Positions 22,025-54,880 of a stretch of DNA of 64,000 nucleotides are shown here, piece by piece. Source of the stretch: Utricularia gibba (taxonomy: Eukaryota > Plantae > Magnoliophyta); NCBI GenBank assembly GCA_002189035.1, contig NEEC01000011.1, forward strand, positions 2,046,001 to 2,110,000, given 5' to 3'. A program made the position numbers and the translations under genes. The notes under the pieces were generated by a model. That model made no database searches. It was not told the origin of the DNA and saw nothing but the letters and a program-made list of their open reading frames with translations. Within the stretch, counting starts at the first letter, position 1. Each line of letters opens with the position of its first letter.

Positions 22025-24929
22025 ATGGCAGCCAACAGATTTGCCACCATGTTGCACAGAAAAACCAATAGGATCACTGTTATTTTGGTTTACGCAGCTC
22101 TGGAATGGTGTCTGATACTTTTATTGTTTCTAAGTTCTCTATTTTCTCATCTGATCATTAAGTTTGCAAACTTTTTTGGGCTCCAGCCTCCTTGCCTTTG
22201 GTGTACTAGAATCGATCATATTTTCGGTTCATCAAATGGGAATAAGAATTTGCATAGGGATCTTCTATGTGAAGCTCATGCCAAGCAAGTTTCGAGATTT
22301 GGGTTTTGTTCGATTCACCATAGATTGGCTGAATCTCAAGATATGTGTCATGATTGCTTGTTCTCTATGCCAGAGTTTGGTTGCTTCTCAGGGACTAAAG
22401 ACTTCGGGTTCACTCCAAATGACGAAATGGATCAAACTTCTAAGTGCTCTTGTTGTGGGATAAATTTAATTTGCAGAAGAACTTCTTCTTTGGATGATTT
22501 GGCTCATGCCCATGTTTCTAAAGAGGGAGATAATGGCTTTGATTATCTGGAAAGTTGTGATTCTGATAAAAAAACACTAGTTCTTGAAGATGACAATGTC
22601 AAGGAGCGTGTTCACGTTTTTAAAGAATCTTCTTCCAATCAGCATCTGGAGTATTTCTTGGACCACACAGGTCATAACTTGGTTCTTGTGAAGGATGAAG
22701 AAATTACAAATATCAAATGCGATGATAAGGCTGAGAATCAAGAATGCAGGTCAGTTATTGATACTGAGGTTGTAAAGAGGGAAGCTTTGTCTGATGATAA
22801 CGGAAGATTTACTGATCTTAGTGTGGATAAAGATCCTAAGGATACCGAGTTTGAAGCTTTATCTGATGGCAATGATAGATTCATTGATCTTGGTATCAGT
22901 CATGAACCTAAAAATACAGATTTTGAAGTTTTATCTGATGATAATGTAAGATTTATTGATCTTGGTGTCAGTGATGAACTTAAAAGTGCAGCTTCTGAAG
23001 CTTTAACTGACGAGAATAGTAGATTCATTGATCTTGATACCAGTCATGAACCTAAAGATGCAGATTTTGAAGCTTTATCAGACGCCAATGATAGATTCAT
23101 TGATCCTGGTGTCAGTGATGAAGCTAAAGATGCAGTTTTTGAAGCTTCGGCTGATGATAAGGGTAGATTCATTGATCTTGGCGTGGATAATGAATCTGAG
23201 GATGCAGTGTCTGGATCCATTCTTATAGAGGACGATGAAAATTCTATTGCTTTTCAAGAAAAAGACATTCCAGTGAATCATAGTGGAGCTCTAAGCACTT
23301 CCCCTTTTGTGGATGCACGTGATTCCCAAGAAACTGCTGAAGCTGGGGAAGCGAAGCCTCTTGATTCTCTTACCGGTACGCTGTTCATTGTTTGATGATT
23401 TCAAATCAACAGGAATTGTGCATGTGAAAGTAAAGCCTAAACCTTTGTGTTGCAGACGATGAAGAAACTGAAGAAGCTGCTCAGCTTCATATTGAAAACG
23501 AGGCAGTTGTCTCAATTGGAACAGAAATCCCTGAACTAGATATGAGTGACGAATTACGAATAATCGAATCTGTTCATACATGCAACATTGATCATGGAGA
23601 TAACTTATCTGGAATTGCAGCCGTTCACAAGTTGGAAGTGCAAGGTAATACCTGGTTCTTTTCTAGCTTTGAAGCATGAATGCAGTTCCTTTTTGCCATT
23701 TTCGTTGACCTGAAGTTCATTCTGTAGGTTCGGAGCAAGTAGAGGAACAGACAGCTGAGTTGCAACCTCTTTCCCTTGGTCACAGTGCATCATTTAACTC
23801 AGAGACTCCAGAGAATGAAGAAGACAGAGTACCTGATACACCTGCATCTATGGACAGTTTTGTTCAGTTGCACAAGAAGGTGCTTTTCCTCGAGAAACGT
23901 AATTCATGGACCGAAGAGTCTTTCGATGGTAGTGTGACAAGTGAACTTGAGATAGGTGATGGGGTAGTGACTGTCGAAAGCTTGAAATCTGCTCTACAGG
24001 CAGAGAGAAAGGCGTTGAAGATACTGTATACTGAATTTGAAGAAGAACGAAACGCTTCTGCGGTGGCAGCTAACCAGACTATGGCCATGATCAATAGACT
24101 TCAAGAAGAGAAAGCTGCTATGCAAATGGAAGCTTTGCAGTATCAGAGAATGATGGAGGAGCAATCTGAGTATGATCAAGATGCTTTGCAGCTTATGAAT
24201 GAGCTTTTGGTGAAAAGGGAGAGTGAAAAACGAGAGCTGGAGAGGGAGTTAGAGGAATGCAGGAAGAAGCTTTTTGAATACGAGGTAAAAGAGGAGGCAA
24301 AAGTGTATGATAAGAACTGCAGAAATGGATTTTCCGCTTCTTTCAGCATCCATGCTGATGAGAATGAAACAGAAACTCAAGAACTTGGAGAGGAATCTAC
24401 TTCTCACAATATGGCTATCGAAGTAAAGGAACCTCTATTCGATTTTGAACACCAAAGGTTGTCCATTCTTGAGCAGCTCTCTGTTCTAGAAGAAAAACTG
24501 TCCACATTGAATGATGCTAAGGATCAACACCCTGTCCAGACTGCAGATGCTCACCTTATCACCAGCGGTGAGGATTCTGTTCATGCTAATGGTTCCCTGG
24601 ACAGCACGGCCGATAGTAAGCATCCTAAGCGTGATAGATCTACTGTTCATAAGGGAAGGTCTCTTCTTCCTTTATTCGACGCGATTTGTGATGATCAAAC
24701 GGTGCAGTCAAATGGAGTGCACAGTACAGAACAAGACTATGAAGAGGAAATGTGCCATCTTTACGAAAGACTAGAGGCTCTTGAAGCGGATAAGGAGTTT
24801 CTTGTGCACTGCATTAGCTCTCTCAATCAAGGTGACAAGGAACTTGTCCATGAAATCCTTCATTCATTAAGGGAACTTAGAAATGTGGGGCTTCAAGCAA
24901 GAGGCAGAAAACATGATAACCACTGGTAA
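22025..24929 (+). CDS. Myosin-binding protein (MyoB receptor, DUF593/GTD-binding domain)
   Basis: N-terminus MAANRFATMLHRKTNRIT..LVYAALEW, Cys-rich PCLWCTRIDH...CEAH, and C-terminal LQAERKAL..LY.E.EEERNASAVAANQTMAMINRLQEEKAAMQMEALQYQRMMEEQ. Three exons, frames checked. Confidence 0.95.
22781..23212 (+). repeat. Six in-frame 72-bp (24-aa) coding repeats in MyoB
   Basis: Units start at 22781, 22853 and onward; consensus approximately EALSDDNxRFIDLGVSxEPKDAxF. Confidence 0.95.
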
Positions 24930-30034: not shown

Positions 30035-30389
30035 TTTAAAAGTCAAAAGAGCTAATATGTCTAACTTTGACTATAAAATTGAAGTGGACTAATAAGTGTT
30101 TAGTATTAATAAAATATTGATGTTATTCGCTGAATAAAAATAATACAATATAATCTATCAAACCGTATCGTGCCACGTGTATTTTCCCAGAGTACTGTGT
30201 GTGTGTTCTGTGCTGTCTTCTGGACAAGCACTCACTGTGTTATTTCTTCGTCCCAAAGGCATTGCGAAGTCGTCGTCCCCAGGCATTAAATTACAGGAGT
30301 AGATGCTTCTCTTTCACGTCCATTTTGTATTATTTTGACCCCGCACGATCGTTCATAGCTTCCCCTTGCCCTTCTTCCTCATCCATCTG

Positions 30390-31271
30390 ATGGCCTCCGA
30401 CGACAAGAATCTTCCCCATGTCAGCCCGGTTGCGCCTCCGGTTTACATGGGGACTCCGGTCACCGCTAATTGGTCGACCGGGCTTTGCGACTGCACCTCC
30501 GACATGACAAACTGTGAGTCGATGATGGGACCTGTTAATTGATCCGACTGCGGCCTTGTAAGATAAATCCTTGCTTTTTTGCTCAGGCTGCATAACGTGC
30601 TGGTGCCCCTGCATCACCTTCGGCCAAATCGCGGAGATTATCGATAGAGGAACCGCGTGTAAGTCATCCAAACTCTTCCCCATCATCAAAGTTCACGGCT
30701 TCACTCCGTTAACTTTGTCTTTTTGAGGAGCACTCTTTCGAGATCTTTAAGATGGATAGATGATCTGATCGCGTCGCTTGTCGCTGCAGCCTGCGGACTG
30801 AGCGGGGCGCTCTACTTTCTGATTGGTGCTGTCACGGGGTGCCCCTGCATCTACTCCTGCTTCTACAGAGCCAAACTGAGGAGCCAGTACTCCCTCCCGG
30901 ATGCACCTTGTGGTGACTGCTTGACTCATTGCTTCTGCGAGCTGTGTGCTCTTTGCCAGGAATACCGCGAGCTCAAGAATCGCGGCTTCGACGTGCCTCT
31001 CGGTACGTACCTGTTTCGATCCTCGTAATTTCTGTGGGTAAATCTACGGATACGAAACCCATGAGCCGATCCACTCCTTACACCATGGATCTCAACAGAT
31101 CCCCTTGAATTTGAATGTCACAGGAACTCGTTTGATTCTTCCGACGTGAATCTGTTTCAGGTTCTAGACTCTCATTAATCGATGTTATTCTTTTCAGGCT
31201 GGCAGGGGAATATGCAAGCACAGAATCCTGGATATGCGGCGCCGCCGGTGATGCCGGGAATGCAACGCTAG
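30390..31271 (+). CDS. PLAC8 / plant cadmium resistance / cell-number-regulator family protein, copy A
   Basis: Four exons: [85 protein letters not shown]...PGMQR*. Confidence 0.95.
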
Positions 31272-31941
31272 AGGAGGTGAAAGTCTCCCTTCCACGGCTG
31301 ACTTTTTACTGTTATTTGTTACTCTACAAAAGTAAAAAACTGGTATGTGTTTTAAAAAAATTAACCGTTCATGATAGTGAATCTATCCCGCTTTCAAACC
31401 TAATAAAATTCAATATTATAATTTTTTACATTCATATCCGTAATTCGACGAATAAAATGATACTTTTGATAGAATTATATCATATTTGTATCTTATATAA
31501 TTTAAATTGATGATTGTTATATTATGTTTGTATTTATATATGATACATCATTAAAATGATGATATCATCAAAACTAATTAATTTTGGTAACATAATAAAT
31601 TAAATATATAATTTAATAAGTTTAAAAATAAATTATTTTTAAAAATTAAATAACTTATTATATAATTTTAAAATTAAAACTTTTTATATTGATTATAATT
31701 TGAAATACTGTCCACAAACTCCAACCATATATAAACACAAATAATTTATAATACTCTATTAATTAAATTAAGCATGTTTAATGAATCGTGAGCAAGTTGC
31801 AGAAAAAACCAGTGACACAATACACCATCCATCATCCATGAGGTGCATGCAACATGCATCCTATGGCTTCTCTCATTATAATATAATATACGATAACGCG
31901 AAAAAAAAAACCGTTGCAAGACAGCAACTTGACATAGCGCA

Positions 31942-32072
31942 TCATCCGCCGCCGCCCTCCTTGCTGGACGGCGGCCGGACCTCCGGACCGGAGCCTGGCT
32001 TAACCGTGTACGGGGCTTGAGGCACCGCTAGGATCGTTTCAGAAGCTACAAGGAGTTACCAGAATGGATTGG
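31942..32072 (-). pseudogene. Truncated duplicate of the JAZ 3' end with the Jas core deleted
   Basis: Aligns by eye to 34464-34739, but joins VPQA directly to PYTVKPGSGPEVRPP; no upstream JAZ exons follow. Confidence 0.85.
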
Positions 32073-32503
32073 AATAAGAAATCTAAAAAATCATGTAATA
32101 GCTATTAAAATATACAATACCATATCATAAAATGAAATTAACATAATCAAATATATATAAAAAATTACAGATTACAAGTAATACATTGGATATAATCTTT
32201 TTTAATATGATTCATATTTTTTATATACTTAAGTTTTACGCGTGTACTCGTATGATCCATCGGATCCTAAATTTCAACAATAACATGTGATATCTAAATA
32301 CACAATAAACATAAATTACATTAAAAAACATTAGATACAATAATAAAATACTAATGATATACCATATCTTTTATTATTTTATTTTAATTTATCAACTTGA
32401 CATTGTTTGTTCATGCTTATCTTTCCAGTCCATTGTGTATTATTTCGACCCCACGCGCTCGTTCATAGCTTAGCTTCCCTTTGCCCTTCTTTTCATCCAT
32501 CTG

Positions 32504-33900
32504 ATGGCCTCCGACGACAAGAATCCTCCCCATTTCAGCCCGGCGGCGCCTCCGGTGTACATGGGGACTCCGGTCGCCGCTCCCTGGTCGACCGGGCTTT
32601 CCGACTGCACCTCCGACGTCGAAAACTGTACGTCGATGATGGGACTTGTTAATTCATCTGTGGACTGTGGCCTTGTTCCTTTATGATAAATCCTTGCTTT
32701 TTTGCTCAGGCTGCATAACGTGCTGGTGCCCCTGCATCACCTTCGCCCAAATCGCGGAGATCATCGATAGAGGGAACCACGTGTAAGTCATCCAAACTCT
32801 TCCCCATCTTCAAAGTTGGAAACCACTTCTATTTTTACGAAATTCAATTATATTTACGTAGAATTGATTTTACCTTCTAAACATGTACCTTAGAATTGAT
32901 TTTTTAGAATCAATTCAATTTTCAGAAAAGCATGAATGTATATCTTTTCATTTAGAATTGTTTTTTCAGAATTGATTTAAGAAATGAATTTAATTCATAT
33001 ATTAATACAAAATTACAAATAATATAATTTTTTAAAATAAATACTAATTTATATTTTTTTAAAAAAATATTCTAATTTTACGGTTTAGGGTTTTACAAAT
33101 TTTCAATTAATAATATAAGAATCATTGATTTAAAAATTTTTAAATAGTTTGATAAATATTGATGGTATATAATATATTTTATTTAAATAAATTCACAAAA
33201 TATAATTATTAATAAATATGTAATTTAGTTATAAAAATAACTTCTTATTGTTTTTTTCAATCCAAACAGATTTCAATTTTATAATAATCATTATCAAAAG
33301 CATTTCTAAACATATATGAATTCTGTTAAAATCAATTGTAGAGTGATTTTTAGAAAGGTTGCCTTCTCTTTTGTCTCTTTGAGGATCACTCTTTCGAAAT
33401 CTTCAAAACGGACAATACGAATAGATGATGATCTGATACCGACGCTTGTGGCTGCAGCCTGCGGACTGGGCGGGGCGCTCTACTTTCTGGTCGGATCTGT
33501 CACGGGGTGCCCCTGCATCTACTCCTGCTTCTACAGAACCAAACTCAGGAGCCAGTACTCGCTCCCGGAGGCGCCTTGTGGTGACTGCTTCACTCGTTGC
33601 TTCTGCGAGCAGTGTGCTCTTTGCCAGGAATACCGCGAGCTCAAGAATCGCGGCTTCAACATGGCTCTCGGGACGTACCTGCTTCGATCCTCCTGAGAAA
33701 TTTCTCTGGGTAAATCTACGGATACAAATCCTCCTTGAATTTGAACGCCACAGGAACTCGTTTGATTCATCTGATGTGAATCTGTTTCAGGTTCTAGACT
33801 CTCATGAATCGATGTTTTTTGTGCAGGCTGGCAGGGGAATGTGCAAGCCCAGAATCCTGGATTTGCGGCGCCGCCGGTGATGCCGGGAATGCAACGCTAG
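32504..33900 (+). CDS. PLAC8/PCR family protein, copy B; +1 frameshift in exon 2 as assembled (pseudogene or sequencing error)
   Basis: Near-identical to copy A. Exon 2 ends AGAGGGAACCACGT|gt versus AGAGGAACCGCGT|gt in copy A. Intron 2 is about 550 bp longer. Confidence 0.85.
32818..33363. mobile_element. Candidate AT-rich MITE inserted in intron 2 of PLAC8 copy B
   Basis: Absent from the matching intron of copy A. Degenerate inverted ends GGAAACCACTTCTA and (reverse strand) GGCAACCTTTCTA, both followed inward by AATTGATTTTA. No clean TSD. Confidence 0.45.
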
Positions 33901-33998
33901 AGGGGGTGAAATTCTCCGTTCCACGGCTGACTTTCTTACCGTGGTTTGTTACTCCGGCAAAAGTAAAAATAAAAAACTGTTGTGTGTTTGTTAAACAA

Positions 33999-34223
33999 TG
34001 TTGTGAAAAATTTTTAAAATTTGTTTTTATTTTTTAAAATTATTTTTGAAAATTAAAAATTAAAAATAAAAATTAACAATTAATTATTTTTACAAAATTA
34101 ATTTTTATAATTATAATTTTAAAAGTATTTTTGATATAATTAATTTTACAATTAAAATGTTATAAAACAAAAATATTTTTACTTTTAAAAAATAAAAATA
34201 AATTTTAAAAATTTTCCAAAACA
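33999..34223. mobile_element. AT-rich fold-back element (MITE-like) in duplication unit B only
   Basis: Left end TGTTGTGAAAAATTTTTAAAATTT matches the reverse complement of the right end, TGTTTTGGAAAATTTTTAAAATTT, and pairing continues about 15 bp inward. Low complexity weakens the call. Confidence 0.4.
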
Positions 34224-34463
34224 CTTCTTAGTTTGTTGATTTCATTTAATATTTATAATTGTATAGCATATATTTATAAAAATACAATTATCTAAAAATA
34301 TATTATTAATTAACTTAAGCATGTTTAATGAATCATGAGCAAGTTCCATAAAAAACGTGATACAGGACACCATCCATCATCCATGAGGTGCATGCAACAT
34401 GCATCCTATGGCTTCTCTCATTATAATATAATACATGATAATGCTAAAAAAATTCACAGCGCA

Positions 34464-35854
34464 TCATGCGCCGCCGCCCTCCTTGCCGGACGGCGGCCGG
34501 ACCTCCGGACCGGAGCCTGGCTTAATTGTGTATGGGGCTGGAGTCATCACCCTGGGTTCCCAATTCATATGCATCAGTATTTTGGTGAATGAAGAATGGA
34601 GGAGACTGGTAGCTTACCGCTCTTTGCGCTTCTCCAAGAACCGAGCCAGAGATGCTTTGCGGGCTTGAGGCACCGCTGTACGTGAGAAGGAAGCAGGATT
34701 AGTTTCAGAAGCTACAAGGAGTTAAAAGAATGGATTGGAGGAATACACGGAGAAAATACCTGAAGACGCTGCAGCAGAAGTAGGTCTCGTGATGGAGGCC
34801 TCCACCTTAACGGATTGAGTATCATTAATCGCCGCCGCAGGGGCTGCGTCTGTTGGGTGGGAGGAAACGGAGATCGGGCTTGCGTGGCGGGAATTGACAA
34901 CACGGTCGCCGGAGGCGGCGACCTTTTGCTGGTCAAAGGTGAGGGGTGGAGGAGTAGCCAATTTTCCAGCAAGGCACATGAGTGCTTTCGCCTGAACTCA
35001 AAACATCTCCGGTCAAACAAAAGAAAGGGATCAGATGAACAAGAAATGGAGTATCGATTACGAACCTTCTCCGGCGTGATGTTGTCAAAAACAGTAACGG
35101 AGCCGCCGTAGAATATAGTTAGCTGCGCCGGGAGATCACGAGCCTTGGTGTTGACTCTGTAAAGAGAAAATAAATGTTGCAAATCGGGTTTATAACATAT
35201 CAAACGTTAAATCGAGACAGAGTCATAAGAAACAGAGCAATATTCACACCTCTGTTCAGTAACGCCGACGACGGAAGAAGGTGAAACAGCGGGGGGCTTA
35301 AGAAAAAAGTGCTGGACAGAATTCTGATCATATCCCGCAAAACACAAGCCCGAATCAAGAAAATGCTTAAGAATAAAAGAGGTTCCATTGTGTAGGAAAA
35401 GAGATGCCCCTGTTACCTTTGCCTGCTTCTCATTTTGATCAGATTTGGGAGGTGTGACAGCAGAAACCTTGTTCGAAAACAGCCATGTAACTCCAGGACT
35501 CCGTGCAAATCCTGAAGATGAGCGGGAAAAAATGACTTCTTATACACAGAGAAAGCAAACTGGATAAGTGAAATGAAGATACATATCTCTTTCGATATCA
35601 AGCTATCCCAGAACAACCTCATCACGAGTCAAGCAACAAAGAACCCAGAAAATAACAAGAACAAAGATTCAAGAAAAAAAAGCCAACAAACTGTAATACT
35701 AGAAGAACAAAGTCAGCTTAAAATCAAAGCTCAAGAACCGCGAATCGGAAGCAGCACAGAAAGGAACAAAAAACAAACCAGAATCTTCAGATCCCCCTTC
35801 TACAAACTCCTCTTTCACAACCCTTGAATTCAAACCCATGAAATCTCTCTCCAT
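34464..35854 (-). CDS. JAZ: JAZ/TIFY repressor, JAZ3/4/9 clade
   Basis: MERDFMGLNS start, TWLFSNKVSA, ZIM motif AQLTIFYGGSVTVFD, Jas motif VPQARKASLARFLEKRKER, phase-2 Jas intron 34617-34551, last exon VMTPAPY (out of frame by one base as assembled). Confidence 0.95.
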
Positions 35855-37503: not shown

Positions 37504-38463
37504 TCATTTCTGCTTTTTGGCTCTCTCCTCCTCCAGCCTCTCGAACAGCGTCCCGTCGAAAACCCCTCTGACCTGCAACACACAACATGGAGTTATCAGA
37601 ATAACAGGTTCAGACAGCCCGGCGTCAGGATCATACAAAAGGTGTCTGAAGGAAGACCAACCATTTCCTTGTGCAGCAGGCCGTCTTTGTCCTTGGCGAC
37701 GGAGTAGAGGATCGGCCACTCTGCAAAGGCACCGAGCCTGCAGCGAACGCAGCAGAGATTTGAGAACATGAATCAACTGGTTAAGTAAGGAGAAGAGTTG
37801 TAAGAGTATATACCATCCGCCGAAGTCACGGGGCTGGCGATTGGCTTTCATCAAAGCGCCAACTTCCTTGCGCGTCAGTGCATTGGGATGAGTCAGTGCG
37901 TGGGTGGCGAATATCGCATCGAATTTCTTTTCATCAAATCTGCGACATGGGTATGCAATCAAACCTCTTCTTGGGGTACATAAACCAGTTTCTGAGGGCA
38001 GGAATTCATGTGTCTGTATGTGTGTATGTACCTTCCGTCTTTGTCGAAGACTCCTGAATCGCTGGTGTGCTTGGCGAACTTGATGTTCTTGATCTCTATT
38101 GGGAAGTTGAAGGAGAAGGGCTTCCCCTGTTTGTGTGCGCAGAAATCTCAGATCCAGATGTGGAAATGATAGAAGGAAAAGGGATGGGGGTCTTACAGGT
38201 CTGGTTTTGGGACTGAGCAGGAGGTTAACGAACACAGCTGCCAAAGACGACACCACTACTCCCAGCCCAATTGCTCTGCATCCTGAAAAAAGAACAGAGG
38301 TTGAAACTTAGCTTCAAAACAAGAAGGAATCCACTCCCATCCGACGGAATTTCACAAGACCTTCAAAAGTTTCCGATGGGTAAATAAGCCCATCCTTGTT
38401 CCGGTCGAAGAACATGGCGTGCCTCTGGAGATGGGTGACCTCTTCATCTTCACGATTCTCCAT
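37504..38463 (-). CDS. Caleosin / peroxygenase (short L-type)
   Basis: Six exons: [21 protein letters not shown] (His plus EF-hand), hydrophobic segment, [63 protein letters not shown]. Confidence 0.93.
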
Positions 38464-40820
38464 TTTCCTTTATCCGTCGAACTGTATCACTCTGATGCAT
38501 AGATCGGAAATGGGTGTCGGTTATTTATACTGCAGAAGCGCCGCGAATTGCCCCCGTGGTCGGAACCCGTGTATTCTAGAAGGACGGAGCCGACCCGTTT
38601 TACTTTTGTTTTAATTTTCTTGTTCAAATTATACATCATGACTTTTCAACTGACCAAACGAAGCCGTGGGATCACCGCCGATGCATCCCCGCCGCCACTC
38701 CTCCGGTCACTCTTGTCGTCTTCAATGATGGGGTTGCCGTCTTTTTTAACCTATTTGCCGGGTGTTGGACGTAACATCATAACTGTTCATCCACTGTTGA
38801 ATTATAATGTTATCAACTAAGAAACTTTCTCCGTGTTTATCCCTGGAATATTATTTAAAAAATCACGATCATATAATTGAATCGTGTTAAATTACGAATA
38901 ATTTATAATGCATATATAGGATAAATTTAAATCTACAATATAAAAAAATGAATCGAAATCCAATAGTGGTTTAATATCTATTAAATCATAATTATTTTAT
39001 TTAAAAAATGATGAATTCAATTATAGTTTTCAAGTCAACTCCCCGATTGAATCGAGTGAATCTATATCCGAAAAAAAACGGGTCGAGTGACACATAAAAT
39101 TATCAAATAATTATTATTATTTGTTTTATTTGACTTTGATTACCTTTTTATCATTTTATTTTATTATGTTTATTTCATTTTCTTTAACTTCATGTTGAAA
39201 TTATTTTAAATTTTATTTTTACATTATATCCATATATTGTTTTCTATTAAAAAATCAGCGTATATTTTATATAATAACATTTAAAATATATCTTTTTACT
39301 AACGGTTCACCACAAAAACGGTGCGGGTTATGCATCCGACTTGAAAACGTAGATAAACGGTTCAGTTTTTTTATTATTTAAAACAGTTATTTTTAGGACT
39401 AAAGTGTAGTTAAATGATCATAATTTTGTATCTCAAATGATTAATTTCAATGGAATTAATTCCACAGTGGGTTTAGTGAATTTAATATACTTTGATGACA
39501 TCGCCAATTTTATAACGTACACAGGGGACACGTGCCGTGTCGCAGAAAGAGGCGGACACCTTGAGTTCACCCCTTGTAAAAGTATTGCATACGGGTCGAC
39601 GCTGTAAACCCAACGTGCTACAAACTTGAACTTCAAGGCATTGACATATGGAAAAGTTTTTGATTGAAACATAGCTTCCGTATTTATTTAGATGTGTGAA
39701 ATAAATATTTTATAATTTATAATATTATTTTAAATCTGTTCATTTTTATCCGCTAAGCGCTACGTCATCGTTTAGAATTCTGTAACATCAATTCTAGAAT
39801 TGTTTGAACTTGAAATGCACACACGCGGAAACGATTTTTGACTATTTAGTGGATGTAAATGAAATAAAAATAATTTAATTTATAAGGATTTAAATACTAA
39901 TATTAAAATTGGATATTAAATAGTATTGAGTAGGAACCATAATTTTAAATAAATTTGCATAGATAGAATTAAAAAAATCACGGAATCTCGTATTTATTTA
40001 AATTTTAGAAATAATCATCCTATAATTTATAATATTATTTTTGAATCCATCCATTCTTATTAACTAAACACTACATCAATATTTGCCACAATGACATTTT
40101 ATTTTAAAATTTTTCAAATTTATTAGAATAACACTTGTTCATTTTACAAGTTTTTTTTATCTTTATTGTATCCTACATAAATCTATTTAATGATAATACC
40201 AAGGAAGATAAATATTTAGACAAAGTAATGCATCTCTATACAAATTGCATGATCAAAGTTCAGATTTTTAATATTTCTGAGAGCATATTCTTAATTCCTA
40301 CATTTTTCTTAAGTCACCAATCATTTACATTTAATACCTTTGCACTTGAAACCTAATACATTTACATTCAATTTTCTATGTGAAATTATTTCTTTGCAAT
40401 ACACCTGAGTTTATGATCATGATGTCACTCATTAGTCCATGGTGGGAATTGGGGAATATTTTTTGTATTTTAGGGTTAATTTTTCACACATTATCATGAT
40501 TATTACTATTAATATTATGTTTTAGTATTTTTTCGCAAATGATTATGGAGTGTAGGTATTTGGCTATTATATGATTTTTTATATTCATTTTTCGATTAAT
40601 ATAAGTGAATTTTGCTATATTCAAGTTCTTTAAAATATGTTATTGTATGTTACTTGATACTATTAAATGTATTGAATATAAATTAGAACCAATTTTCTTT
40701 ATTTAAAAAACAAATCAGATTAGATTTTGAGTTTTTTTTCATATTCAATATTTTTTTATAAAAATATATTTAAAAATATTACTTTCAGAATTAATAATTT
40801 CTTCCCATTATAACTTAGCG

Positions 40821-40847
40821 TTAAGGTTTAGGGTTTAGGGTTTAGAG
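40821..40847 (+). repeat. Short interstitial plant telomere-like repeat (mirror copy at 44015-44041)
   Basis: TTAAGG TTTAGGG TTTAGGG TTTAGAG. Confidence 0.8.
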
Positions 40848-41053
40848 TGAGTATTAATCTCCAGCACCTGCTTGGAATACTCATGATGGATGTGTGCTGG
40901 GTATTTTTGCACGAAAATCTTGAAAAAAAATGATTTTTTTACACAGCACGAAGAACAAGTTCAGGCTATTGTCTGAAATCAATTCTACACTTGAGTGTTG
41001 AGTGTTTTCAATCAACTTGAACAAGGGCATTCATCGAATCACACCCCGTATCA

Positions 41054-42273
41054 CTATTTTGAAGAGATCCGCCACCCGCACAGAATTTCCATATCCTTCA
41101 TCGCGCTCATGTTGTCGAAGAGGGTGATTGGTTTAATGTTGTCCAATGCTTCCCTTTCTCTGGCTCTTCTTGCCTGAATACTGTCGTCGACAACTTTTAG
41201 CGCCTCTGCGGCTGCGTTGATTTCAGCCTGGAACCGCATTTTCTCTGTTCACAAAGACAATAGAATAAGAATATTATTGTTCGCATTTAAGAAGGAAACA
41301 AGCGCTTCCCTCACCTTCTTGCAGTTCCTTCTGGTATCTCTCTGATTCTTGGCGCCTTTCCGCAGGATGGCTATCCTTGATCTACAGAAAAATCAGTAAA
41401 AATTATAGCCGTATGAATTTCAGACAACAGGGCTGAATCCATGTCTGGTTACCTTATCCTCCACGGACTGATGGGTAGACTTGAAGATGATGTCTTGGAA
41501 TCGTTTCTTCAGAGCAATAGCGCGTTGGGTCTGTTGCCACGCTTTCGTTTGCGGCAGGTCGCCTACTCGACAGGGAATCGGGATCGGGATCGGGATCGGG
41601 ATGAATGATAACAAGAATGAAATCGAAATGAGGAAGAAGGGAACAGAGTGATCATACCCAGAGGGATATCTTTAGCGCCAGAAGGAGTACTCTCCTCTGG
41701 ACTGACTGCACCAGGAGCCTTAGCGCATTGTGAGTCACCGGAAGCGGTGGAACCATTTGACGCCACCGTCGTGACGCCCGACTCATTCGAACGTCCGGGC
41801 GTCCCTTCAATCCCACAGGAATGTATCAGACATCCTGTTCGATACACAATAGGATGGTGATCATCGTTCTTAATCTCACCCTTTTCAATGATCTTTTCCA
41901 GAGCCTGGGGCGCCTTCGCCTTCCCTGAATCCCACATTTTTACGAAGAACTCTTTCAGCTCTCTGGCGTACATGTGAACTCTGTCTCTGGGACGATTGTA
42001 CATGATCCCATTGGCGAAAATGAGACGAACATCCGCAGAAAACTCGTCCGCCGTCATGTACCACCCACTCTCCATACGGCGCTTCACTTTTCCAAGATCC
42101 ATCGAATGCTCCAAACGATCAAAGGGCTTGCAGAAAATGAAAGCCTTGGGATGATTCATCAAATCCTTCAGCACCTTCCCGCAACGCTCCCTTTCTGCAA
42201 CGGCCATCTCCGGCCGCGCCCTCTTTGGCAATCCGCCGCCATTCTCCTGCGCCGCCTTGCGCTTGATCGTCAT
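41054..42273 (-). CDS. GTE8/9/11/12-like bromodomain protein, left copy (327 aa when spliced)
   Basis: Mirror image of 42589-43808. Confidence 0.85.
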
Positions 42274-42371
42274 GATCGCACTTCTTGAATGGCAAGGAAT
42301 GGGAAGAAGCGGGAACTGGGATGAGAATAAGCGGGAACTAATGACGCAGCCATCAGGTGGAGAGCGCCCGC

Positions 42372-42377
42372 TTTATA
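42372..42377 (-). promoter_or_regulatory. TATA box of the left GTE copy
   Basis: The minus strand reads GGGCTATAAAGCGGGCG, about 100 bp upstream of the ATG at 42273. Confidence 0.55.
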
Positions 42378-42588
42378 GCCCGTTGGAGCAGATTTGTTTC
42401 CATAGATAATAATCACCAAGATATGGAATGTTGGACATTCAATCACATTTCAATAAAATAAAATCATTTTTTTGTAATAATCATTCTTGAGCGGGCGCTC
42501 TCCACCTGATGGCTGCGTCATTAGTTCCCGCTTATTCTCATCCCAGTTCCCGCTTCTTCCCATTCCTTGCCATTCAAGAAGTGCGATC

Positions 42589-43808
42589 ATGACGATCAAG
42601 CGCAAGGCGGCGCAGGAGAATGGCGGCGGATTGCCAAAGAGGGCGCGGCCGGAGATGGCCGTTGCAGAAAGGGAGCGTTGCGGGAAGGTGCTGAAGGATT
42701 TGATGAATCATCCCAAGGCTTTCATTTTCTGCAAGCCCTTTGATCGTTTGGAGCATTCGATGGATCTTGGAAAAGTGAAGCGCCGTATGGAGAGTGGGTG
42801 GTACATGACGGCGGACGAGTTTTCTGCGGATGTTCGTCTCATTTTCGCCAATGGGATCATGTACAATCGTCCCAGAGACAGAGTTCACATGTACGCCAGA
42901 GAGCTGAAAGAGTTCTTCGTAAAAATGTGGGATTCAGGGAAGGCGAAGGCGCCCCAGGCTCTGGAAAAGATCATTGAAAAGGGTGAGATTAAGAACGATG
43001 ATCACCATCCTATTGTGTATCGAACAGGATGTCTGATACATTCCTGTGGGATTGAAGGGACGCCCGGACGTTCGAATGAGTCGGGCGTCACGACGGTGGC
43101 GTCAAATGGTTCCACCGCTTCCGGTGACTCACAATGCGCTAAGGCTCCTGGTGCAGTCAGTCCAGAGGAGAGTACTCCTTCTGGCGCTAAAGATATCCCT
43201 CTGGGTATGATCACTCTGTTCCCTTCTTCCTCATTTCGATTTCATTCTTGTTATCATTCATCCCGATCCCGATCCCGATCCCGATTCCCTGTCGAGTAGG
43301 CGACCTGCCGCAAACGAAAGCGTGGCAACAGACCCAACGCGCTATTGCTCTGAAGAAACGATTCCAAGACATCATCTTCAAGTCTACCCATCAGTCCGTG
43401 GAGGATAAGGTAACCAGACATGGATTCAGCCCTGTTGTCTGAAATTCATACGGCTATAATTTTTACTGATTTTTCTGTAGATCAAGGATAGCCATCCTGC
43501 GGAAAGGCGCCAAGAATCAGAGAGATACCAGAAGGAACTGCAAGAAGGTGAGGGAAGCGCTTGTTTCCTTCTTAAATGCGAACAATAATATTCTTATTCT
43601 ATTGTCTTTGTGAACAGAGAAAATGCGGTTCCAGGCTGAAATCAACGCAGCCGCAGAGGCGCTAAAAGTTGTCGACGACAGTATTCAGGCAAGAAGAGCC
43701 AGAGAAAGGGAAGCATTGGACAACATTAAACCAATCACCCTCTTCGACAACATGAGCGCGATGAAGGATATGGAAATTCTGTGCGGGTGGCGGATCTCTT
43801 CAAAATAG
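42589..43808 (+). CDS. GTE8/9/11/12-like bromodomain protein, right copy (327 aa when spliced)
   Basis: GT-AG exons 42589-43204, 43300-43409, 43481-43547 and 43618-43808 total 984 nt in frame. Bromodomain CGKVLKDLMNH...MDLG...EFSADVRLIFANGIMYN; C-terminus RAIALKKRFQDIIFK and EKMRFQAEINAAAEA...DMEIL resemble the GTE9/11-type tail. Confidence 0.85.
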
Positions 43809-45619
43809 TGATACGGGGTGTGATTCGATGAATGCCCTTGTTCAAGTTGATTGAAAACACTCAACACTCAAGTGTAGAATTGATTTCAGACAATAGCCTG
43901 AACTTGTTCTTCGTGCTGTGTAAAAAAATCATTTTTTTTCAAGATTTTCGTGCAAAAATACCCAGCACACATCCATCATGAGTATTCCAAGCAGGTGCTG
44001 GAGATTAATACTCACTCTAAACCCTAAACCCTAAACCTTAACGCTAAGTTATAATGGGAAGAAATTATTAATTCTGAAAGTAATATTTTTAAATATATTT
44101 TTATAAAAAAATATTGAATATGAAAAAAAACTCAAAATCTAATCTGATTTGTTTTTTAAATAAAGAAAATTGGTTCTAATTTATATTCAATACATTTAAT
44201 AGTATCAAGTAACATACAATAACATATTTTAAAGAACTTGAATATAGCAAAATTCACTTATATTAATCGAAAAATGAATATAAAAAATCATATAATAGCC
44301 AAATACCTACACTCCATAATCATTTGCGAAAAAATACTAAAACATAATATTAATAGTAATAATCATGATAATGTGTGAAAAATTAACCCTAAAATACAAA
44401 AAATATTCCCCAATTCCCACCATGGACTAATGAGTGACATCATGATCATAAACTCAGGTGTATTGCAAAGAAATAATTTCACATAGAAAATTGAAATTGA
44501 AATTGAAATATTAAAATGTATAAAAAATTTATAAATTACTAGTAATTAGTTAAATTGTTATCTTTATTAATATAATCTATATTTGTTATATATATGGTTT
44601 TCATGTGTGATTATTTGATCTATTGAATTCTTAATTTTAACAAGTTTTTGATGTTTGAGACAATGTTCTCCCATTCTAAGAATAAGCATATTCTTGATAC
44701 CCAATGCCATGGGAAGATTTCCGAGCTCACCACAAATCCATTCCCATCATCAGATCCAGCAGCCACATGACATGCATCCACTGCCTTCAACCAAACATTT
44801 CGTAAAGGTCTTCATTCTCCATTTCTTGTCACAATCACTTTTGTTTTTCTTTCTTTTTCTTTTTTCATTCTTGACAACATGCGAAAACCACGAAAAAATC
44901 TTGATTTCTTGCAAGAATCCCACCACATAGTCAAGTTCGTCAAGTAACTGTTAACAAGTCGCTCCATATGATTGGTTGAAGGCAGCAGCCCTTCTAGAAC
45001 ACCAGCAACCTGTCCGCATCTCAGTTTTACAGTCAGCTCGCGCACAGGGAGCAACTCATCATTTCGGGGCAAATAGTTTGTGTCGTTATTTCGTAATTTT
45101 TAATTTATTGACGAGAGGAAACTGCCAATAAAAAGGAAGGTTCGTTGGATGTAACCCATCAGAAGCAATGGTCACGTTCCTACATGCCAAATACATTGTC
45201 ACTAACGTGTAATGTGTCTGATCATTACATGGTGCCAACTTGTTGATACATATCTTAGCCACCGGCCTAAAATACTGGCCAAATGATTTTGTGGGCCGAA
45301 CCGAACCGGCGGTCCACAACGTTGTCACGAGAACCATGCAGCAACTATTGGTTTAAAAAAAAAAAGATATAAACGGGAGTGGTCCCCACTTAACATTTAA
45401 TAAAATTAAAATAATAATATAAATTTAATATTCTTATTCTATTTTTTTTATAAACGATTGATGCGGTAACTAGTTTCAAAACTAATACCTAAATCCCACA
45501 TACTGCGGATTAAATTGTGACATTCCAAACGGACACGAAGTTTGGGATTGGATGGATAGTAACGGGAATTTGGAGATTTCCAGCAATGGAGTTGGAGGAG
45601 AATTTTTTCAGTGCAGGGT

Positions 45620-46183
45620 TTAGAACTTGCGGAGACATGGACCGTTCAGCATCATCGCCTTGAACTCACGGAAGCAAATCGTGCCATTTCCATCGGCGTC
45701 CACACCGCTAATCATCTTCCGGCAGTCATCCAGAGTGCATTCCTCCCCCAAGCTCTTCAGAACGTTGAACAATTCCTCCGCGGAAATGGATCCGTTCTTA
45801 TCCAAATCGAATACCTCAAACGCGTTCCGCAGCGTCTCGTCGTTATCCGAATCATCCGCGGTGTTGAGCGCGATGAATTCGCGCAGATCGATGAATCCGT
45901 CGCCGTCGGAATCCACTTCCTGGATCATCAGCCTTAGTTCCTCCTCTGTCGCCAAATGCCCTAGGCTACTCATTATCTTACCGAGCTCCGCCGCGGAGAT
46001 CTTTCCGTCGCCGTTGGCGTCGAATTTCTTGAATACCTCAACCAATTCCTCCTCTGCCATGCGGTACCTCCCGTTCGCCGAGGAAGCACGTTGCGAATCC
46101 GCCGGAACTTGATTTTCAGATCCGCCGGGGACGGCACTCTGCTTCTTATTCTTCTTCCGCTTGAAGAAGGCGTTAAACCCCAT
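45620..46183 (-). CDS. Calmodulin-like protein, four EF-hands (CML25-like)
   Basis: MGFNAFFKRK start; loops DANGDGKISAAE, DSDGDGFIDLRE, DLDKNGSISAEE, DADGNGTICFRE. Intronless. Confidence 0.95.
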   Translation of the reverse strand: MGFNAFFKRKKNKKQSAVPGGSENQVPADSQRASSANGRYRMAEEELVEVFKKFDANGDGKISAAELGKIMSSLGHLATEEELRLMIQEVDSDGDGFIDLREFIALNTADDSDNDETLRNAFEVFDLDKNGSISAEELFNVLKSLGEECTLDDCRKMISGVDADGNGTICFREFKAMMLNGPCLRKF

Positions 46184-52501: not shown

Positions 52502-54880
52502 CTAAACCAAATGTTGTTTGGTTACCTCCATTCTCTTGAGCAATGCAGAAACCTCAGACTGCATTCTTATCTTCATCTTGTAATAATCACGGTGAGAATT
52601 CTCCAGGAGCTTCACCTCCTCCATTTTCATCTTGAGCCTTTCCTCAGTCTCCTCCAAACGAAGTTTTGCCATCTTCTCACCGTACTCTTGATCCAACTTG
52701 TCATGTTGCAGCCTCATCAGCCGCTTGTAGCTTTCTATTTCTCTCCGTGCCTCATCGGCTCGATTCTGGAACATTCTTGCTTCTGCCTCTTTGATTCTTA
52801 CAAGGCCATCAAGGCTTTCAAAACCACCTTTTTTAACAGGCTTGACTGACCATTCATCTTCAACTATCTTTTCGTTGTGACCAAGATCAAAAGTCAGTGC
52901 TTCCGCTATGCCATTTTGCTGATGTGCCAAGGGATCTCTTAAAACTGGGGCTGCTGATACTGTTTCTCGCAAGCTATCTGCAGCTGTAAAGCAGAAGAAA
53001 CTCATAAGTTTCTTAGTCATATCAGATATACAAGAGAAATCAATGCACTTACAGTTAAAGAACTGAAAGATGGCATGGCAGACTTCTGGTGCAGTCATCT
53101 TTTTGTTTTGAAGTTTGGTGAGCATTTCATCAGCCATAAAATGCAGTTCTTTCCCTTTTCGATCTCTGCTTCCTTGAAAGATCTTTTTGACGTAATCAAG
53201 CTCTTTTGACAAGGAATCCGCACCCCAATTCTTAGCACAAGACATGAAAACATCCTTGACAAATCCGAACATTTCTGAAGCATGGCCACAGCAGAGGCAG
53301 TGAAACTGCATCTCGGATGTTCCAGATAAAAAGGGGCCAGGTTTAATGAGATTCTTCTGAAGGCCACAAGCAGCATGGCACCAATGAGAACATGTATCAC
53401 AACCAACCCAACTGCAGGTATTGCTTCCACAATCAAAGTTGAAACAAACAGGGCACATGCATTCACTGCAAAATCCCTTCTTTGAGGAACAGATCTTGCA
53501 GTCACAGTCATCAACTGGAAGTAACCTCCGGCAGTTTATGTTTCGGCACCTTTCCAATGAGAAAATCTCAACTAATTCTATCACAGGAAGTTGGTTTCCA
53601 TCATCCAAAAAACTTGATAAACCTATTTTGATTGCAACCAGGATCTCAATATGGGTCTTAGAGCATTTGGAGAGAGCTTCCTTTGTGAGGTCTGATCTCC
53701 TTGCCAGTTTCTTTTGCATGGTGATCAGCTGATCTCTTCTTTGAGGGCTGTCGACCATATTCTTCAGATATTCCTTCAGAGATGCAACCGTTTCATCAGT
53801 AAGCTCCTTCATCATGGAAGACGCTTCAGGAATAGATTCTGAAACGATTTCCCTAAGTATCCTTTCGGGTCTAGAAAGCCTGCCTGCATTGACTACATCC
53901 ATATCATCTGAATCTCTAACGCTCTCCAAATTGGCTCTTGAATCCCCGGACAGTGAATCCATTCTTGGCTTTGCAGGCAACTCAGACGGCAATGCAGAAA
54001 CGTTGTCTGAGTTTGCCACACATTGATCTTTGAACAAGCTGATTCGATTACCAAGCCCCAGAAGCCGGGCATCACCATGATCAGCTAGTGCAACATTCCC
54101 ATCTCCAATTGGTCTAAACCTGCTATGAACTGAACCGTTAGTTCCTTCTCCACAATTCCAAATCTGATCACAGTCATAGTTTTCAGTGGAGTTCTTTGTT
54201 AATGAGCAGCTGGGGTTGTGGGAGATCAGGCGAGAACAAGACTGCGAATGCGAAACCGCAGTGAAATCATTAGAATATGTCATCCTCGTATTATTACAAG
54301 ATGGTCCCAAAGACTGCAAGCTCCTGCTAGGCTTCAAATGGGATGGAAGAGTCGGATTTTGAAACCTGTCGGAACGAGCCAAAGATAGAGAAACATCAGG
54401 GAGAGCCAAGGAAAGATTCAAAGACTCAACCTTGGACTTCTTTAGCCTATTCTCTCCATCAGCTTCCACATTCTCAATATCCCTCTTAGATGAATTGCTT
54501 CTATGACCATTCAACTGAAGGAGACCTCCTTCCAACCAAGCGTTCTTATCTTCATCATTGCGATCCTCGAAAACAACTGCTTCCTTCCCTTTAAACCTTC
54601 CATTCAAAGAAGTTACCATGTTTTGACGGGTATCCTTCTCAAGACCCACAAGTTTCGAATTTTCACAAAGGTAGCTGAGAGTTAACTCCTGGGAGCTTAA
54701 ATTCAGAGCCCTTTTCGAAATTGAGTCAGATTTCTCACCGAAATCACCTATCATTTTAATTTTATCAGCAGAGCCGTGGTGAAGAAAATGAATACCCTTC
54801 TTTGCAGGCTCGATCTTCCCATTTTGGAAGCCTCCGCTGCTCTCCCCACACAATTCCTCTGCATAACTATCACCCACCAT
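52502..54880 (-). CDS. OBE3: OBERON-family PHD protein, OBE3/TITANIA type
   Basis: ELTLSYLCENS, HNPSCSLT..STENYD, WNCGEGTNGSVHSRFRPIGDG, PHD CDCKICS.KKGFCSECMCPVC...SHWCHAACG, C-terminal coiled coil. One 69-nt intron at 53052-52984. Confidence 0.92.
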   Translation of the reverse strand: MVGDSYAEELCGESSGGFQNGKIEPAKKGIHFLHHGSADKIKMIGDFGEKSDSISKRALNLSSQELTLSYLCENSKLVGLEKDTRQNMVTSLNGRFKGKEAVVFEDRNDEDKNAWLEGGLLQLNGHRSNSSKRDIENVEADGENRLKKSKVESLNLSLALPDVSLSLARSDRFQNPTLPSHLKPSRSLQSLGPSCNNTRMTYSNDFTAVSHSQSCSRLISHNPSCSLTKNSTENYDCDQIWNCGEGTNGSVHSRFRPIGDGNVALADHGDARLLGLGNRISLFKDQCVANSDNVSALPSELPAKPRMDSLSGDSRANLESVRDSDDMDVVNAGRLSRPERILREIVSESIPEASSMMKELTDETVASLKEYLKNMVDSPQRRDQLITMQKKLARRSDLTKEALSKCSKTHIEILVAIKIGLSSFLDDGNQLPVIELVEIFSLERCRNINCRRLLPVDDCDCKICSSKKGFCSECMCPVCFNFDCGSNTCSWVGCDTCSHWCHAACGLQKNLIKPGPFLSGTSEMQFHCLCCGHASEMFGFVKDVFMSCAKNWGADSLSKELDYVKKIFQGSRDRKGKELHFMADEMLTKLQNKKMTAPEVCHAIFQFFNCKCIDFSCISDMTKKLMSFFCFTAADSLRETVSAAPVLRDPLAHQQNGIAEALTFDLGHNEKIVEDEWSVKPVKKGGFESLDGLVRIKEAEARMFQNRADEARREIESYKRLMRLQHDKLDQEYGEKMAKLRLEETEERLKMKMEEVKLLENSHRDYYKMKIRMQSEVSALLKRMEVTKQHLV

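What the first reader, a model, noticed from the sequence alone, without database searches (positions are those of the whole stretch)
40367..44495. 2-kb perfect inverted duplication holding two head-to-head chromatin-reader genes
Seen: two 2,006-bp arms around a 117-bp spacer, each with an intact four-exon GTE-like gene, ATGs 315 bp apart, unique sequence on both outer flanks. The right outer junction sits in an ATTGAA triplet, a possible microhomology. Established: long near-perfect palindromes are unstable, can extrude cruciforms, and produce siRNAs when transcribed through. Inference: a very recent fold-back or template-switch duplication. Divergent transcription from the centre would double gene dosage, whereas read-through from either flank would make a 2-kb hairpin able to silence the gene, so this could be a dosage or silencing switch on a bromodomain gene. 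An assembly artefact is possible, but a simple fold-back chimera would not normally return to unique sequence at a second junction.
Basis: partly seen in the sequence, partly recalled or inferred. Interest (0 to 1): 0.85.

Follow-up and report, generated by a model that had tools for sequence, protein, structure and literature searches.

The report
Mirror-image duplicated bromodomain gene pair
A plant chromosome carries two base-for-base identical, mirror-image copies of a small bromodomain gene around a 117-base centre; the duplication looks real and very young, is of a kind already known in plants, and nothing yet shows that it acts as a switch.

Summary
Arms 40367-42372 and 42490-44495 are 2,006 nt and 100% complementary around a unique 117-nt spacer, with no residual similarity beyond the borders.

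Each arm holds an intact four-exon, 327-aa gene. Its bromodomain is nearest to the BET type (BRD4/BRD2), has a ZA loop about 13 residues short, and no ET domain was detected.

Contigs rebuilt independently from public read sets bridge three of the four junctions: left outer, spacer-to-right-arm and right outer. The left-arm-to-spacer junction is bridged by none. The one contig that holds the spacer stops exactly at that border, which I cannot explain.

The centre is asymmetric and unlike an adapter, so a missed-adapter fold-back artefact is unlikely.

A canonical TATA box straddles the left-arm/spacer border and only the left copy has it. The right arm ends in ATTGAA, directly followed by two more ATTGAA units. 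Both points fit the left copy as the original and a microhomology-mediated template switch or fold-back repair.

No listed RNA run holds the gene, so the dosage and silencing ideas are untested. Close precedents exist: Arabidopsis VIM4-VIM2 (Cvi-0), PAI1-PAI4 and maize Mu killer.

The scan has noted many other gene-sized palindromes elsewhere in this genome. Verdict: a new member of a known kind, of moderate interest.

The parts
40367..42372 (-). Left arm of the palindrome. It runs from 100 bp upstream of the ATG to 688 bp past the stop codon of the gene copy on the minus strand.
   Evidence: Its outer junction with the left flank is bridged by X1 record 4 (40279-40997).
42373..42489 (.). Unique, asymmetric 117-nt spacer (28% G+C). 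Together with 100 bp of each arm it forms the 315-bp divergent promoter region.
   Evidence: It shows no self-complementarity and no similarity to either flank. X1 record 6 (42373-42740, no differences) joins it to the right arm.
42490..44495 (+). Right arm, the exact reverse complement of the left arm.
   Evidence: Its outer junction is bridged by X2 record 10 (44339-44612); X4 record 28 (44305-44509) reaches only 14 nt beyond it.
41055..42273 (-). Left gene copy. Exons 42273-41658, 41562-41453, 41381-41315 and 41244-41055 encode a 327-aa bromodomain protein.
   Evidence: Mirror image of the model built. Pfam bromodomain. Best solved relatives are BRD4 and BRD2.
42589..43807 (+). Right gene copy. 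Exons 42589-43204, 43300-43409, 43481-43547 and 43618-43807 give the identical product.
   Evidence: GT-AG at all three introns and an open frame throughout.
42372..42377 (-). TATAAA box (context CTATAAAG) 104 nt upstream of the left copy's ATG. Five of its six bases lie in the spacer, so the right copy lacks it.
   Evidence: Read directly. Its promoter role is an inference.
44490..44507 (+). Three ATTGAA units. The first is the last six bases of the right arm and the other two begin the right flank, a candidate 6-nt microhomology at the rejoining point.
   Evidence: (period-6 array 44488-44509).
40821..40845 (+). Plant telomere-like TTTAGGG run (3.6 units) downstream of the gene. Its mirror copy lies at 44017-44041.

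Best explanation
This is a genuine, evolutionarily very young head-to-head inverted duplication of a 2,006-bp segment that carries one complete, lineage-specific gene with a bromodomain nearest to the BET type. The host is a fast-evolving plant of the order Lamiales. Most likely the left copy with the spacer as its native upstream region is the original. During replication or break repair a DNA end switched to the complementary strand just past the spacer and copied the gene backwards for 2 kb. It then rejoined the chromosome at a short ATTGAA repeat, by microhomology-mediated template switching or fold-back priming followed by end joining. The result is two identical genes that diverge from a shared 315-bp region. 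Only the left copy keeps the canonical TATA box. The most probable present state is a neutral or mildly dosage-raising structural variant, one of many gene-sized palindromes in this genome, rather than an evolved switch. Shown: the structure, the intact genes, and three of four junctions in independent reads. Inferred: which copy is the original, the mechanism, the age and the lack of special function.
For: The arms are perfect and the borders sharp, with no residual homology beyond them. Independent Logan contigs bridge the left outer junction (X1 record 4), the spacer-to-right-arm junction (X1 record 6) and the right outer junction (X2 record 10), all. X1 differs from the window at 40474, so it is not simply the assembly's own reads. 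X2 carries what I recognise from memory as a 454-type adapter tail (not checked with a tool), which would make it a different platform. The same arm end is therefore attached to two different unique flanks. The spacer is unique, asymmetric and AT-rich like local intergenic DNA, unlike the centre expected from a missed-adapter chimera. The TATAAA box straddles the left-arm/spacer border. Under the 'left copy is the original' model both novel junctions are the ones seen in reads. The arm ends in ATTGAA followed by two more units, with a chance expectation of about 1e-3 at this base composition. Microsatellites and homopolymer runs inside the arms are also identical, whereas a tandem PLAC8 gene pair in the same window has drifted to 83-97% identity. 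Zero differences in 2 x 2,006 bp would bound the age at about 1e5 generations, assuming roughly 7e-9 changes per site per generation (an Arabidopsis figure recalled from memory).
Against: Junction 42372/42373 is not bridged by any independent contig. The only contig that holds the spacer ends exactly on its first base, which is unlikely as a chance end. All runs were low-depth contigs, so copy number could not be measured. The left and right outer junctions were seen in different runs. Many near-perfect gene palindromes are noted in this assembly, which could also point to a systematic process: gene conversion or an assembly habit. No ancestral empty allele was found, so the polarity and the microhomology are inferred from the derived allele alone.
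Confidence: 0.6

Rival explanations
1. The palindrome is old, and arm-to-arm gene conversion keeps the arms identical, as in the human Y-chromosome palindromes. The perfect identity would then say nothing about age.
For: The same genome carries many near-perfect gene-bearing palindromes. Some are described as a perfect core inside an older, diverged inverted duplication, and a follow-up on the RNR1 pair favoured copy-correction (unchecked notes). A run under the same species label (X3) holds a copy of the gene about 96% alike, so the gene itself is not new.
Against: There is no diverged extension of the repeat beyond either border. The AT-rich non-coding parts of the arms show no G+C enrichment relative to the flanks, so there is no trace of biased conversion. 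Even the microsatellites are identical. No X3 contig bridges any junction, so there is no evidence that the palindrome is shared.
Confidence: 0.2
2. The centre is an assembly artefact. At least the outer part of the segment is truly duplicated in inverted orientation, but the left copy does not run on to the spacer as drawn, or the two copies are not adjacent.
For: Junction 42372/42373 is seen only in the assembly. X1's spacer contig stops exactly at that border. Depths do not show a two-fold excess over the arms. The earlier follow-up on the RNR1 palindrome also found no independent read across its centre.
Against: A misjoin through the repeat would give arm plus reverse-complemented spacer, not arm-spacer-arm (my reasoning from the geometry). 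A missed-adapter fold-back would duplicate the spacer as well, or leave an adapter. The spacer is single-copy and asymmetric. The three other junctions are in raw-read-derived contigs from two studies. The TATA box formed across this junction sits at a sensible distance from the ATG, which suggests it is the native gene-promoter junction.
Confidence: 0.1
3. The locus works as a natural hairpin-RNA silencer or a dosage switch. Read-through from the right flank would give a transcript with a perfect 2-kb fold-back, which would be diced into siRNAs that silence both copies and any paralogues.
For: Precedents exist. In Arabidopsis Cvi-0 the head-to-head VIM4-VIM2 inverted repeat yields siRNAs once read-through occurs. 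The PAI1-PAI4 inverted repeat triggers methylation in trans (PMC13213937; PMC3431836). Maize Mu killer forms a 2.4-kb hairpin. A calmodulin-like gene at 45623-46183 on the minus strand points at the right arm from 1.1 kb away, so a read-through source exists.
Against: No RNA run listed holds the gene at all. No small-RNA or methylation data were reachable. Head-to-head genes transcribe away from the centre, so a hairpin needs an outside promoter and a failure to terminate. Nothing here shows regulation in either direction.
Confidence: 0.1

Closest known systems
Arabidopsis Cvi-0 VIM4-VIM2 head-to-head inverted repeat (PMC13213937)
   Same: Two inverted, head-to-head copies of a gene for a chromatin or DNA-methylation reader lie close together. 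The structure is a natural structural variant.
   Different: There the arms are diverged paralogues from an ancient duplication. siRNA production, chimeric read-through transcripts and trans silencing were demonstrated. Here the arms are identical, the spacer is 117 bp, and no RNA evidence exists.
Arabidopsis PAI1-PAI4 inverted repeat and maize Mu killer (reviewed in PMC3431836)
   Same: A recent inverted duplication of a gene-sized segment. Mu killer forms a perfect 2.4-kb hairpin, close in size to the 2.0-kb arms here.
   Different: PAI1-PAI4 is tail-to-tail and is transcribed through from an outside promoter. Mu killer derives from a transposon. Both have proven silencing activity; this locus has none shown.
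Inverted duplications by microhomology-mediated template switching (FoSTeS/MMBIR) or fold-back priming at a break (from my own knowledge of Hastings et al. 2009 and Carvalho et al. 2011; not checked in the library)
   Same: An inverted copy lies next to its template, separated by a short unique spacer, with sharp borders and a few bases of microhomology at the rejoining point.
   Different: The ancestral allele is not available, so the switch points and the microhomology at the inner junction cannot be read.
Conversion-maintained palindromes such as the human Y-chromosome P1-P8 (from my own knowledge)
   Same: Near-perfect arms that carry intact genes around a short unique spacer.
   Different: Those arms run from 9 kb to 1.45 Mb, are shared between species, and their age is proven. 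Here the arms are 2 kb and sharing with relatives is unknown.
BET / plant GTE bromodomain proteins
   Same: The bromodomain is nearest to BRD4 and BRD2 among solved structures. The acetyl-lysine Asn is in place. A C-terminal coiled-coil motif is weakly shared with a Trema bromodomain protein.
   Different: No ET domain was detected, the ZA loop is about 13 residues shorter, and no relative in the representatives search reaches more than 45% identity.

Membership tests
Inverted (palindromic) segmental duplication | Two adjacent arms that are reverse complements over their whole length | tested here: met
   2,006 nt, 100% complementary.
Inverted (palindromic) segmental duplication | All junctions present in reads independent of the assembly | tested here: inconclusive
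   three of four junctions are bridged (40366/40367, 42489/42490, 44495/44496). Junction 42372/42373 is not bridged, and a contig ends exactly there.
Inverted (palindromic) segmental duplication | Two-fold read depth over the arms | tested here: inconclusive
   contig word depths are 2-8 on both arms and flanks, too low and too noisy to count copies.
Hairpin-RNA / siRNA-generating inverted-repeat locus (PAI1-PAI4, VIM4-VIM2 Cvi, Mu killer) | A transcript that runs through both arms | not testable with these tools
Hairpin-RNA / siRNA-generating inverted-repeat locus (PAI1-PAI4, VIM4-VIM2 Cvi, Mu killer) | 21-24-nt small RNAs and non-CG methylation over the arms | not testable with these tools
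   No small-RNA or bisulfite run was offered.
Missed-adapter / fold-back assembly chimera | A symmetric centre (no unique spacer, or adapter sequence) and junctions absent from other read sets | tested here: not met
   the spacer is unique and not self-complementary; three junctions are found in independent contigs.
Foldback or long-TIR transposon | Target-site duplication flanking the element; further copies elsewhere | tested here: not met
   The flank ends (ACATTTACA and ATTGAAATT) share no direct repeat. There is no other copy in the window. The arms hold a host-type gene with introns. Genome-wide copy number was not testable.
Conversion-maintained ancient palindrome | The same palindrome in diverged relatives, or a diverged outer extension of the arms | tested here: inconclusive
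   There is no outer extension. The 96%-alike copy in X3 bridges no junction, so sharing is unknown.
BET / GTE bromodomain protein | Bromodomain with the conserved acetyl-lysine-binding Asn | tested here: met
   Pfam PF00439 at E=2e-12. The Asn aligns with that of BRD4.
BET / GTE bromodomain protein | ET (extra-terminal) domain | tested here: not met
   There is no PF17035 hit on exon 1 or exon 4. Exons 2 and 3 are too short to hold one.
BET / GTE bromodomain protein | Full-length ZA loop | tested here: not met
   A 13-residue gap relative to the Trema homologue. Matches to solved structures begin only after the loop.

The most novel reading that the evidence does not exclude
This locus would be one snapshot of an active, genome-wide process in a miniature plant genome. 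In that process, fold-back template switching repeatedly makes gene-sized perfect palindromes (RNR1, GDSL, SAUR, patatin and this bromodomain gene). Here the new palindrome would already act as a hairpin source that tunes a divergent chromatin-reader family.
Probability: 0.1. Interest if true: 0.65.

Novelty: new member of a known kind. Interest (0 to 1): 0.38.

Why it matters
On its own this is an ordinary, if unusually clean, young inverted gene duplication, and such structures are known raw material for hairpin-RNA loci in plants. Its value is twofold. It is a clean case in which both borders can be read, including a 6-nt microhomology and a TATA box that suggests which copy is the original. 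It also adds to a series of gene-sized palindromes that the scan has noted across this genome. If those hold up with long reads, they would point to an unusually active fold-back duplication process in a very compact plant genome.

Tried and rejected
- Looked for the gene in protein collections. The word-index search found nothing, not even the gene itself. Exact look-ups of the exon-1 ORF and of the neighbouring calmodulin-like gene found no other assembly, so no second assembly could be compared.
- The exhaustive representatives search gave only distant bromodomain relatives, at most 45% identity.
- An exact search for the spacer in JGI metagenome contigs found nothing.
- The RNA-run search listed no holder.
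- Rfam found nothing in 38-47 kb.
- The bacterial-type promoter/terminator scan was uninformative for a plant.
- ORFs in the flanks at 39.4 kb and 44.6-45.3 kb have no Pfam match.
- Transposon reading rejected: no target-site duplication and no second copy in the window.
- Repeat-mediated misjoin rejected, because it cannot produce an arm-spacer-arm order.
- Missed-adapter chimera rejected, because the centre is asymmetric.
- Differences between the window and the X3 copy (8-9 amino-acid changes, 5 silent, one possible stop near a contig end) are too few and too close to contig ends to judge selection.
- Literature searches for palindromes or inverted duplications in Utricularia gibba, my guess at the species, found nothing relevant.
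Full report
**Observation**

The repeat finder reports a single long inverted repeat in the 64-kb window. Its arms are 40367-42372 and 42490-44495, 2,006 nt each and 100% complementary, with 117 nt between them. A string comparison confirms that the arms are identical.

Alignments of the reverse-complemented left flank against the right flank do not exceed shuffled controls near the borders. The same holds for either flank against the spacer and for the spacer against its own reverse complement. The repeat therefore stops abruptly at both outer ends, and the centre is truly asymmetric. The start codons lie at 42273 (minus strand) and 42589 (plus strand), 315 bp apart. The right arm ends in ATTGAA and is followed by two further ATTGAA units.

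**What the arms contain**

Each arm runs from 100 bp upstream of an ATG to 688 bp beyond the stop codon of a four-exon gene. In the right copy the exons are 42589-43204, 43300-43409, 43481-43547 and 43618-43807. All three introns are GT-AG and the product is 327 aa without interruption.

- Exon 1 carries a Pfam bromodomain (E=2e-12).
- The nearest solved structures are BRD4 and BRD2, with the acetyl-lysine Asn aligned.
- The ZA loop is about 13 residues shorter than in a Trema homologue, and the matches to solved structures begin only after that loop.
- No ET domain is detected.
- The C-terminal coiled-coil motif is weakly shared with the Trema protein.
- In an exhaustive search of 1.8 billion representatives the best single-domain relatives are angiosperm bromodomain proteins, and no listed hit exceeds 45% identity.

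So this is a divergent, lineage-specific gene. 'GTE-like' is right for the bromodomain type, not for the whole architecture.

**Host**

An OBERON3 gene at 52505-54880 matches Lamiales species best (Sesamum, Perilla, Salvia, Buddleja), at only 59-64% identity. The window's own proteins are absent from the collections. The sequence is AT-rich between genes, has short introns, and contains plant-type TTTAGGG runs.

I suspect a member of the Lentibulariaceae such as Utricularia. The grounds are these features, the presence of the locus in a 'plant metagenome' run, and runs from 2013 with what looks like a 454 adapter tail. This guess rests on memory and was not verified.

**Is it real?**

Only contigs rebuilt by Logan from public runs were available. 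They are low-depth and have no strand. One call was allowed.

| Junction | Position | Independent support |
|---|---|---|
| Left outer | 40366/40367 | X1 record 4 spans 40279-40997 |
| Left arm to spacer | 42372/42373 | none |
| Spacer to right arm | 42489/42490 | X1 record 6 spans 42373-42740, no differences |
| Right outer | 44495/44496 | X2 record 10 spans 44339-44612; X4 record 28 reaches 14 nt across |

- X1 is a 2016 plant metagenome. Its record 4 differs from the window at 40474, so it is not the assembly's own data.
- X2 is a 2013 run of another study. One of its contigs ends in letters I take for a 454 adapter.
- The outer end of the arm is therefore attached to two different unique flanks, and the spacer is attached to an arm, in raw-read-derived contigs from two studies.

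Two artefact routes fail on geometry. A misjoin through the repeat would produce arm plus reverse-complemented spacer, not arm-spacer-arm. A missed-adapter fold-back would mirror the spacer or leave adapter sequence, and neither is seen.

The weak point is the fourth junction, 42372/42373. No contig bridges it. X1's spacer contig ends exactly on the first base of the spacer, and the 31-mers that would cross into the left arm are missing. A chance end at depth 2.7, a second allele to the left of 42373, or a different centre in that plant cannot be told apart. I leave this unexplained. Depths of 2-8 on arms and flanks alike cannot count copies. I put the structure as drawn at roughly 85-90%.

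**Which copy came first, and how**

On the minus strand a canonical CTATAAAG box sits 104 nt upstream of the left copy's ATG. Five of the six TATAAA bases lie in the spacer and one lies in the arm. The right copy has unrelated sequence at that place. This suggests that the left copy plus the spacer is the native gene with its promoter, and that the right arm is the insert. If so, the two novel junctions are exactly the ones seen in independent contigs.

At the far end the new arm stops after ATTGAA, where the right flank continues with ATTGAA ATTGAA. A six-base match has an expected frequency of about 1e-3 at this base composition.

The simplest mechanism is as follows. A replicating or broken end just right of the spacer switched to the complementary strand. 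Any microhomology used at that step is now hidden inside the arms. The end copied 2,006 nt backwards and then re-annealed at the ATTGAA repeat. This is microhomology-mediated template switching, or fold-back priming followed by end joining. The polarity and the mechanism are inferences from the derived allele alone.

**Age**

There are no differences in 2 x 2,006 bp, including a hexanucleotide microsatellite in intron 1, a telomere-like heptamer run and several homopolymer runs. At about 7e-9 changes per site per generation (an Arabidopsis figure from memory) this bounds the age at about 1e5 generations, unless the arms are being homogenised.

- A tandem PLAC8 gene pair in the same window has drifted to 83-97% identity, so duplicates here do diverge.
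- Against long-term conversion, there is no diverged outer extension and no G+C enrichment of the AT-rich arm parts.
- For conversion, the scan has noted many near-perfect gene-bearing palindromes elsewhere in this genome (RNR1 with an 18-bp centre, GDSL, SAUR, patatin and others). A follow-up on RNR1 favoured copy-correction. Those notes are unchecked leads.
- A 2019 run under the same species label (X3) holds only a 96%-alike copy of the gene, introns included. It lies in short pieces at word depths of 17-96 and bridges no junction. It shows the gene is older than the palindrome but says nothing about the palindrome's age.

**Function**

Nothing could be tested. No listed RNA run holds the gene, and no small-RNA or methylation data were on offer.

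Head-to-head genes transcribe away from the centre, so a 2-kb hairpin RNA needs an outside promoter. A calmodulin-like gene on the minus strand at 45623-46183 points toward the right arm from 1.1 kb away and is a conceivable read-through source.

The idea has solid precedents:
- The head-to-head VIM4-VIM2 inverted repeat of Arabidopsis Cvi-0, where a deletion enabled read-through, siRNAs and trans silencing (PMC13213937).
- The PAI1-PAI4 inverted repeat (PMC3431836).
- Maize Mu killer with its 2.4-kb hairpin (PMC3431836).

The concept is therefore known, and here it is only a possibility. I rate a working silencer or switch at about 10%.

**Verdict**

This is a real-looking, very young inverted duplication of a complete, divergent bromodomain gene with readable borders. 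It is a new member of a known kind. Interest is moderate and comes mainly from the recurring pattern of gene-sized palindromes in this genome. One junction still rests on the assembly alone, and long reads would settle it.

Noticed in passing
window 42373 (X1 record 6): The only independent contig that holds the spacer ends exactly on the spacer's first base. The words crossing into the left arm are absent from that run.
   Followed up: partly
window 41449-42344 and 42660-43974 (X3): A 2019 run under the same species label holds only a ~96%-alike copy of the gene, introns included. It has 20 differences and 2 indels in 618 nt, lies in short pieces, and shows word depths of 17-96, far above its depth on the flanks. 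It could be several diverged copies or another accession or species. One piece would read a stop at codon 61, near a contig end.
   Followed up: partly
window 30363-34546: A tandem duplication with a period of about 2.1-2.7 kb at 83-97% identity carries two PLAC8-family genes. It is an older duplicate pair and a useful contrast to the perfect palindrome.
   Followed up: partly
window 40821-40845 and 44017-44041: A run of 3.6 plant telomere-type TTTAGGG units (telo-box-like) lies about 210 bp downstream of each gene copy's stop codon.
   Followed up: no
window 41577-41602 and 43260-43285: A hexanucleotide microsatellite (ATCGGG, 4.3 units) in intron 1 is identical in both arms.
   Followed up: no
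window 52505-54880 (-): A single-ORF OBERON3 homologue (PHD finger plus coiled coil) of 792 aa is only 59-64% identical to its best Lamiales relatives, which shows how fast this lineage evolves.
   Followed up: partly
window 22709-23212: Five to six tandem 72-nt (24-aa) repeats lie inside a long ORF. The scan has already noted them as MyoB linker repeats (s1-191069).
   Followed up: no
window 37507-38256 (-) and 45623-46183 (-): The flanking genes are a caleosin on the left, transcribed away from the palindrome, and a four-EF-hand calmodulin-like gene on the right, transcribed toward it.
   Followed up: partly
whole genome: The scan's notes list many gene-sized near-perfect palindromes in this assembly (RNR1, GDSL, SAUR, patatin, and arms of 5-19 kb). 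This is either a genome-wide biological process or a systematic feature of the assembly, and it deserves one joint check with long reads.
   Followed up: no
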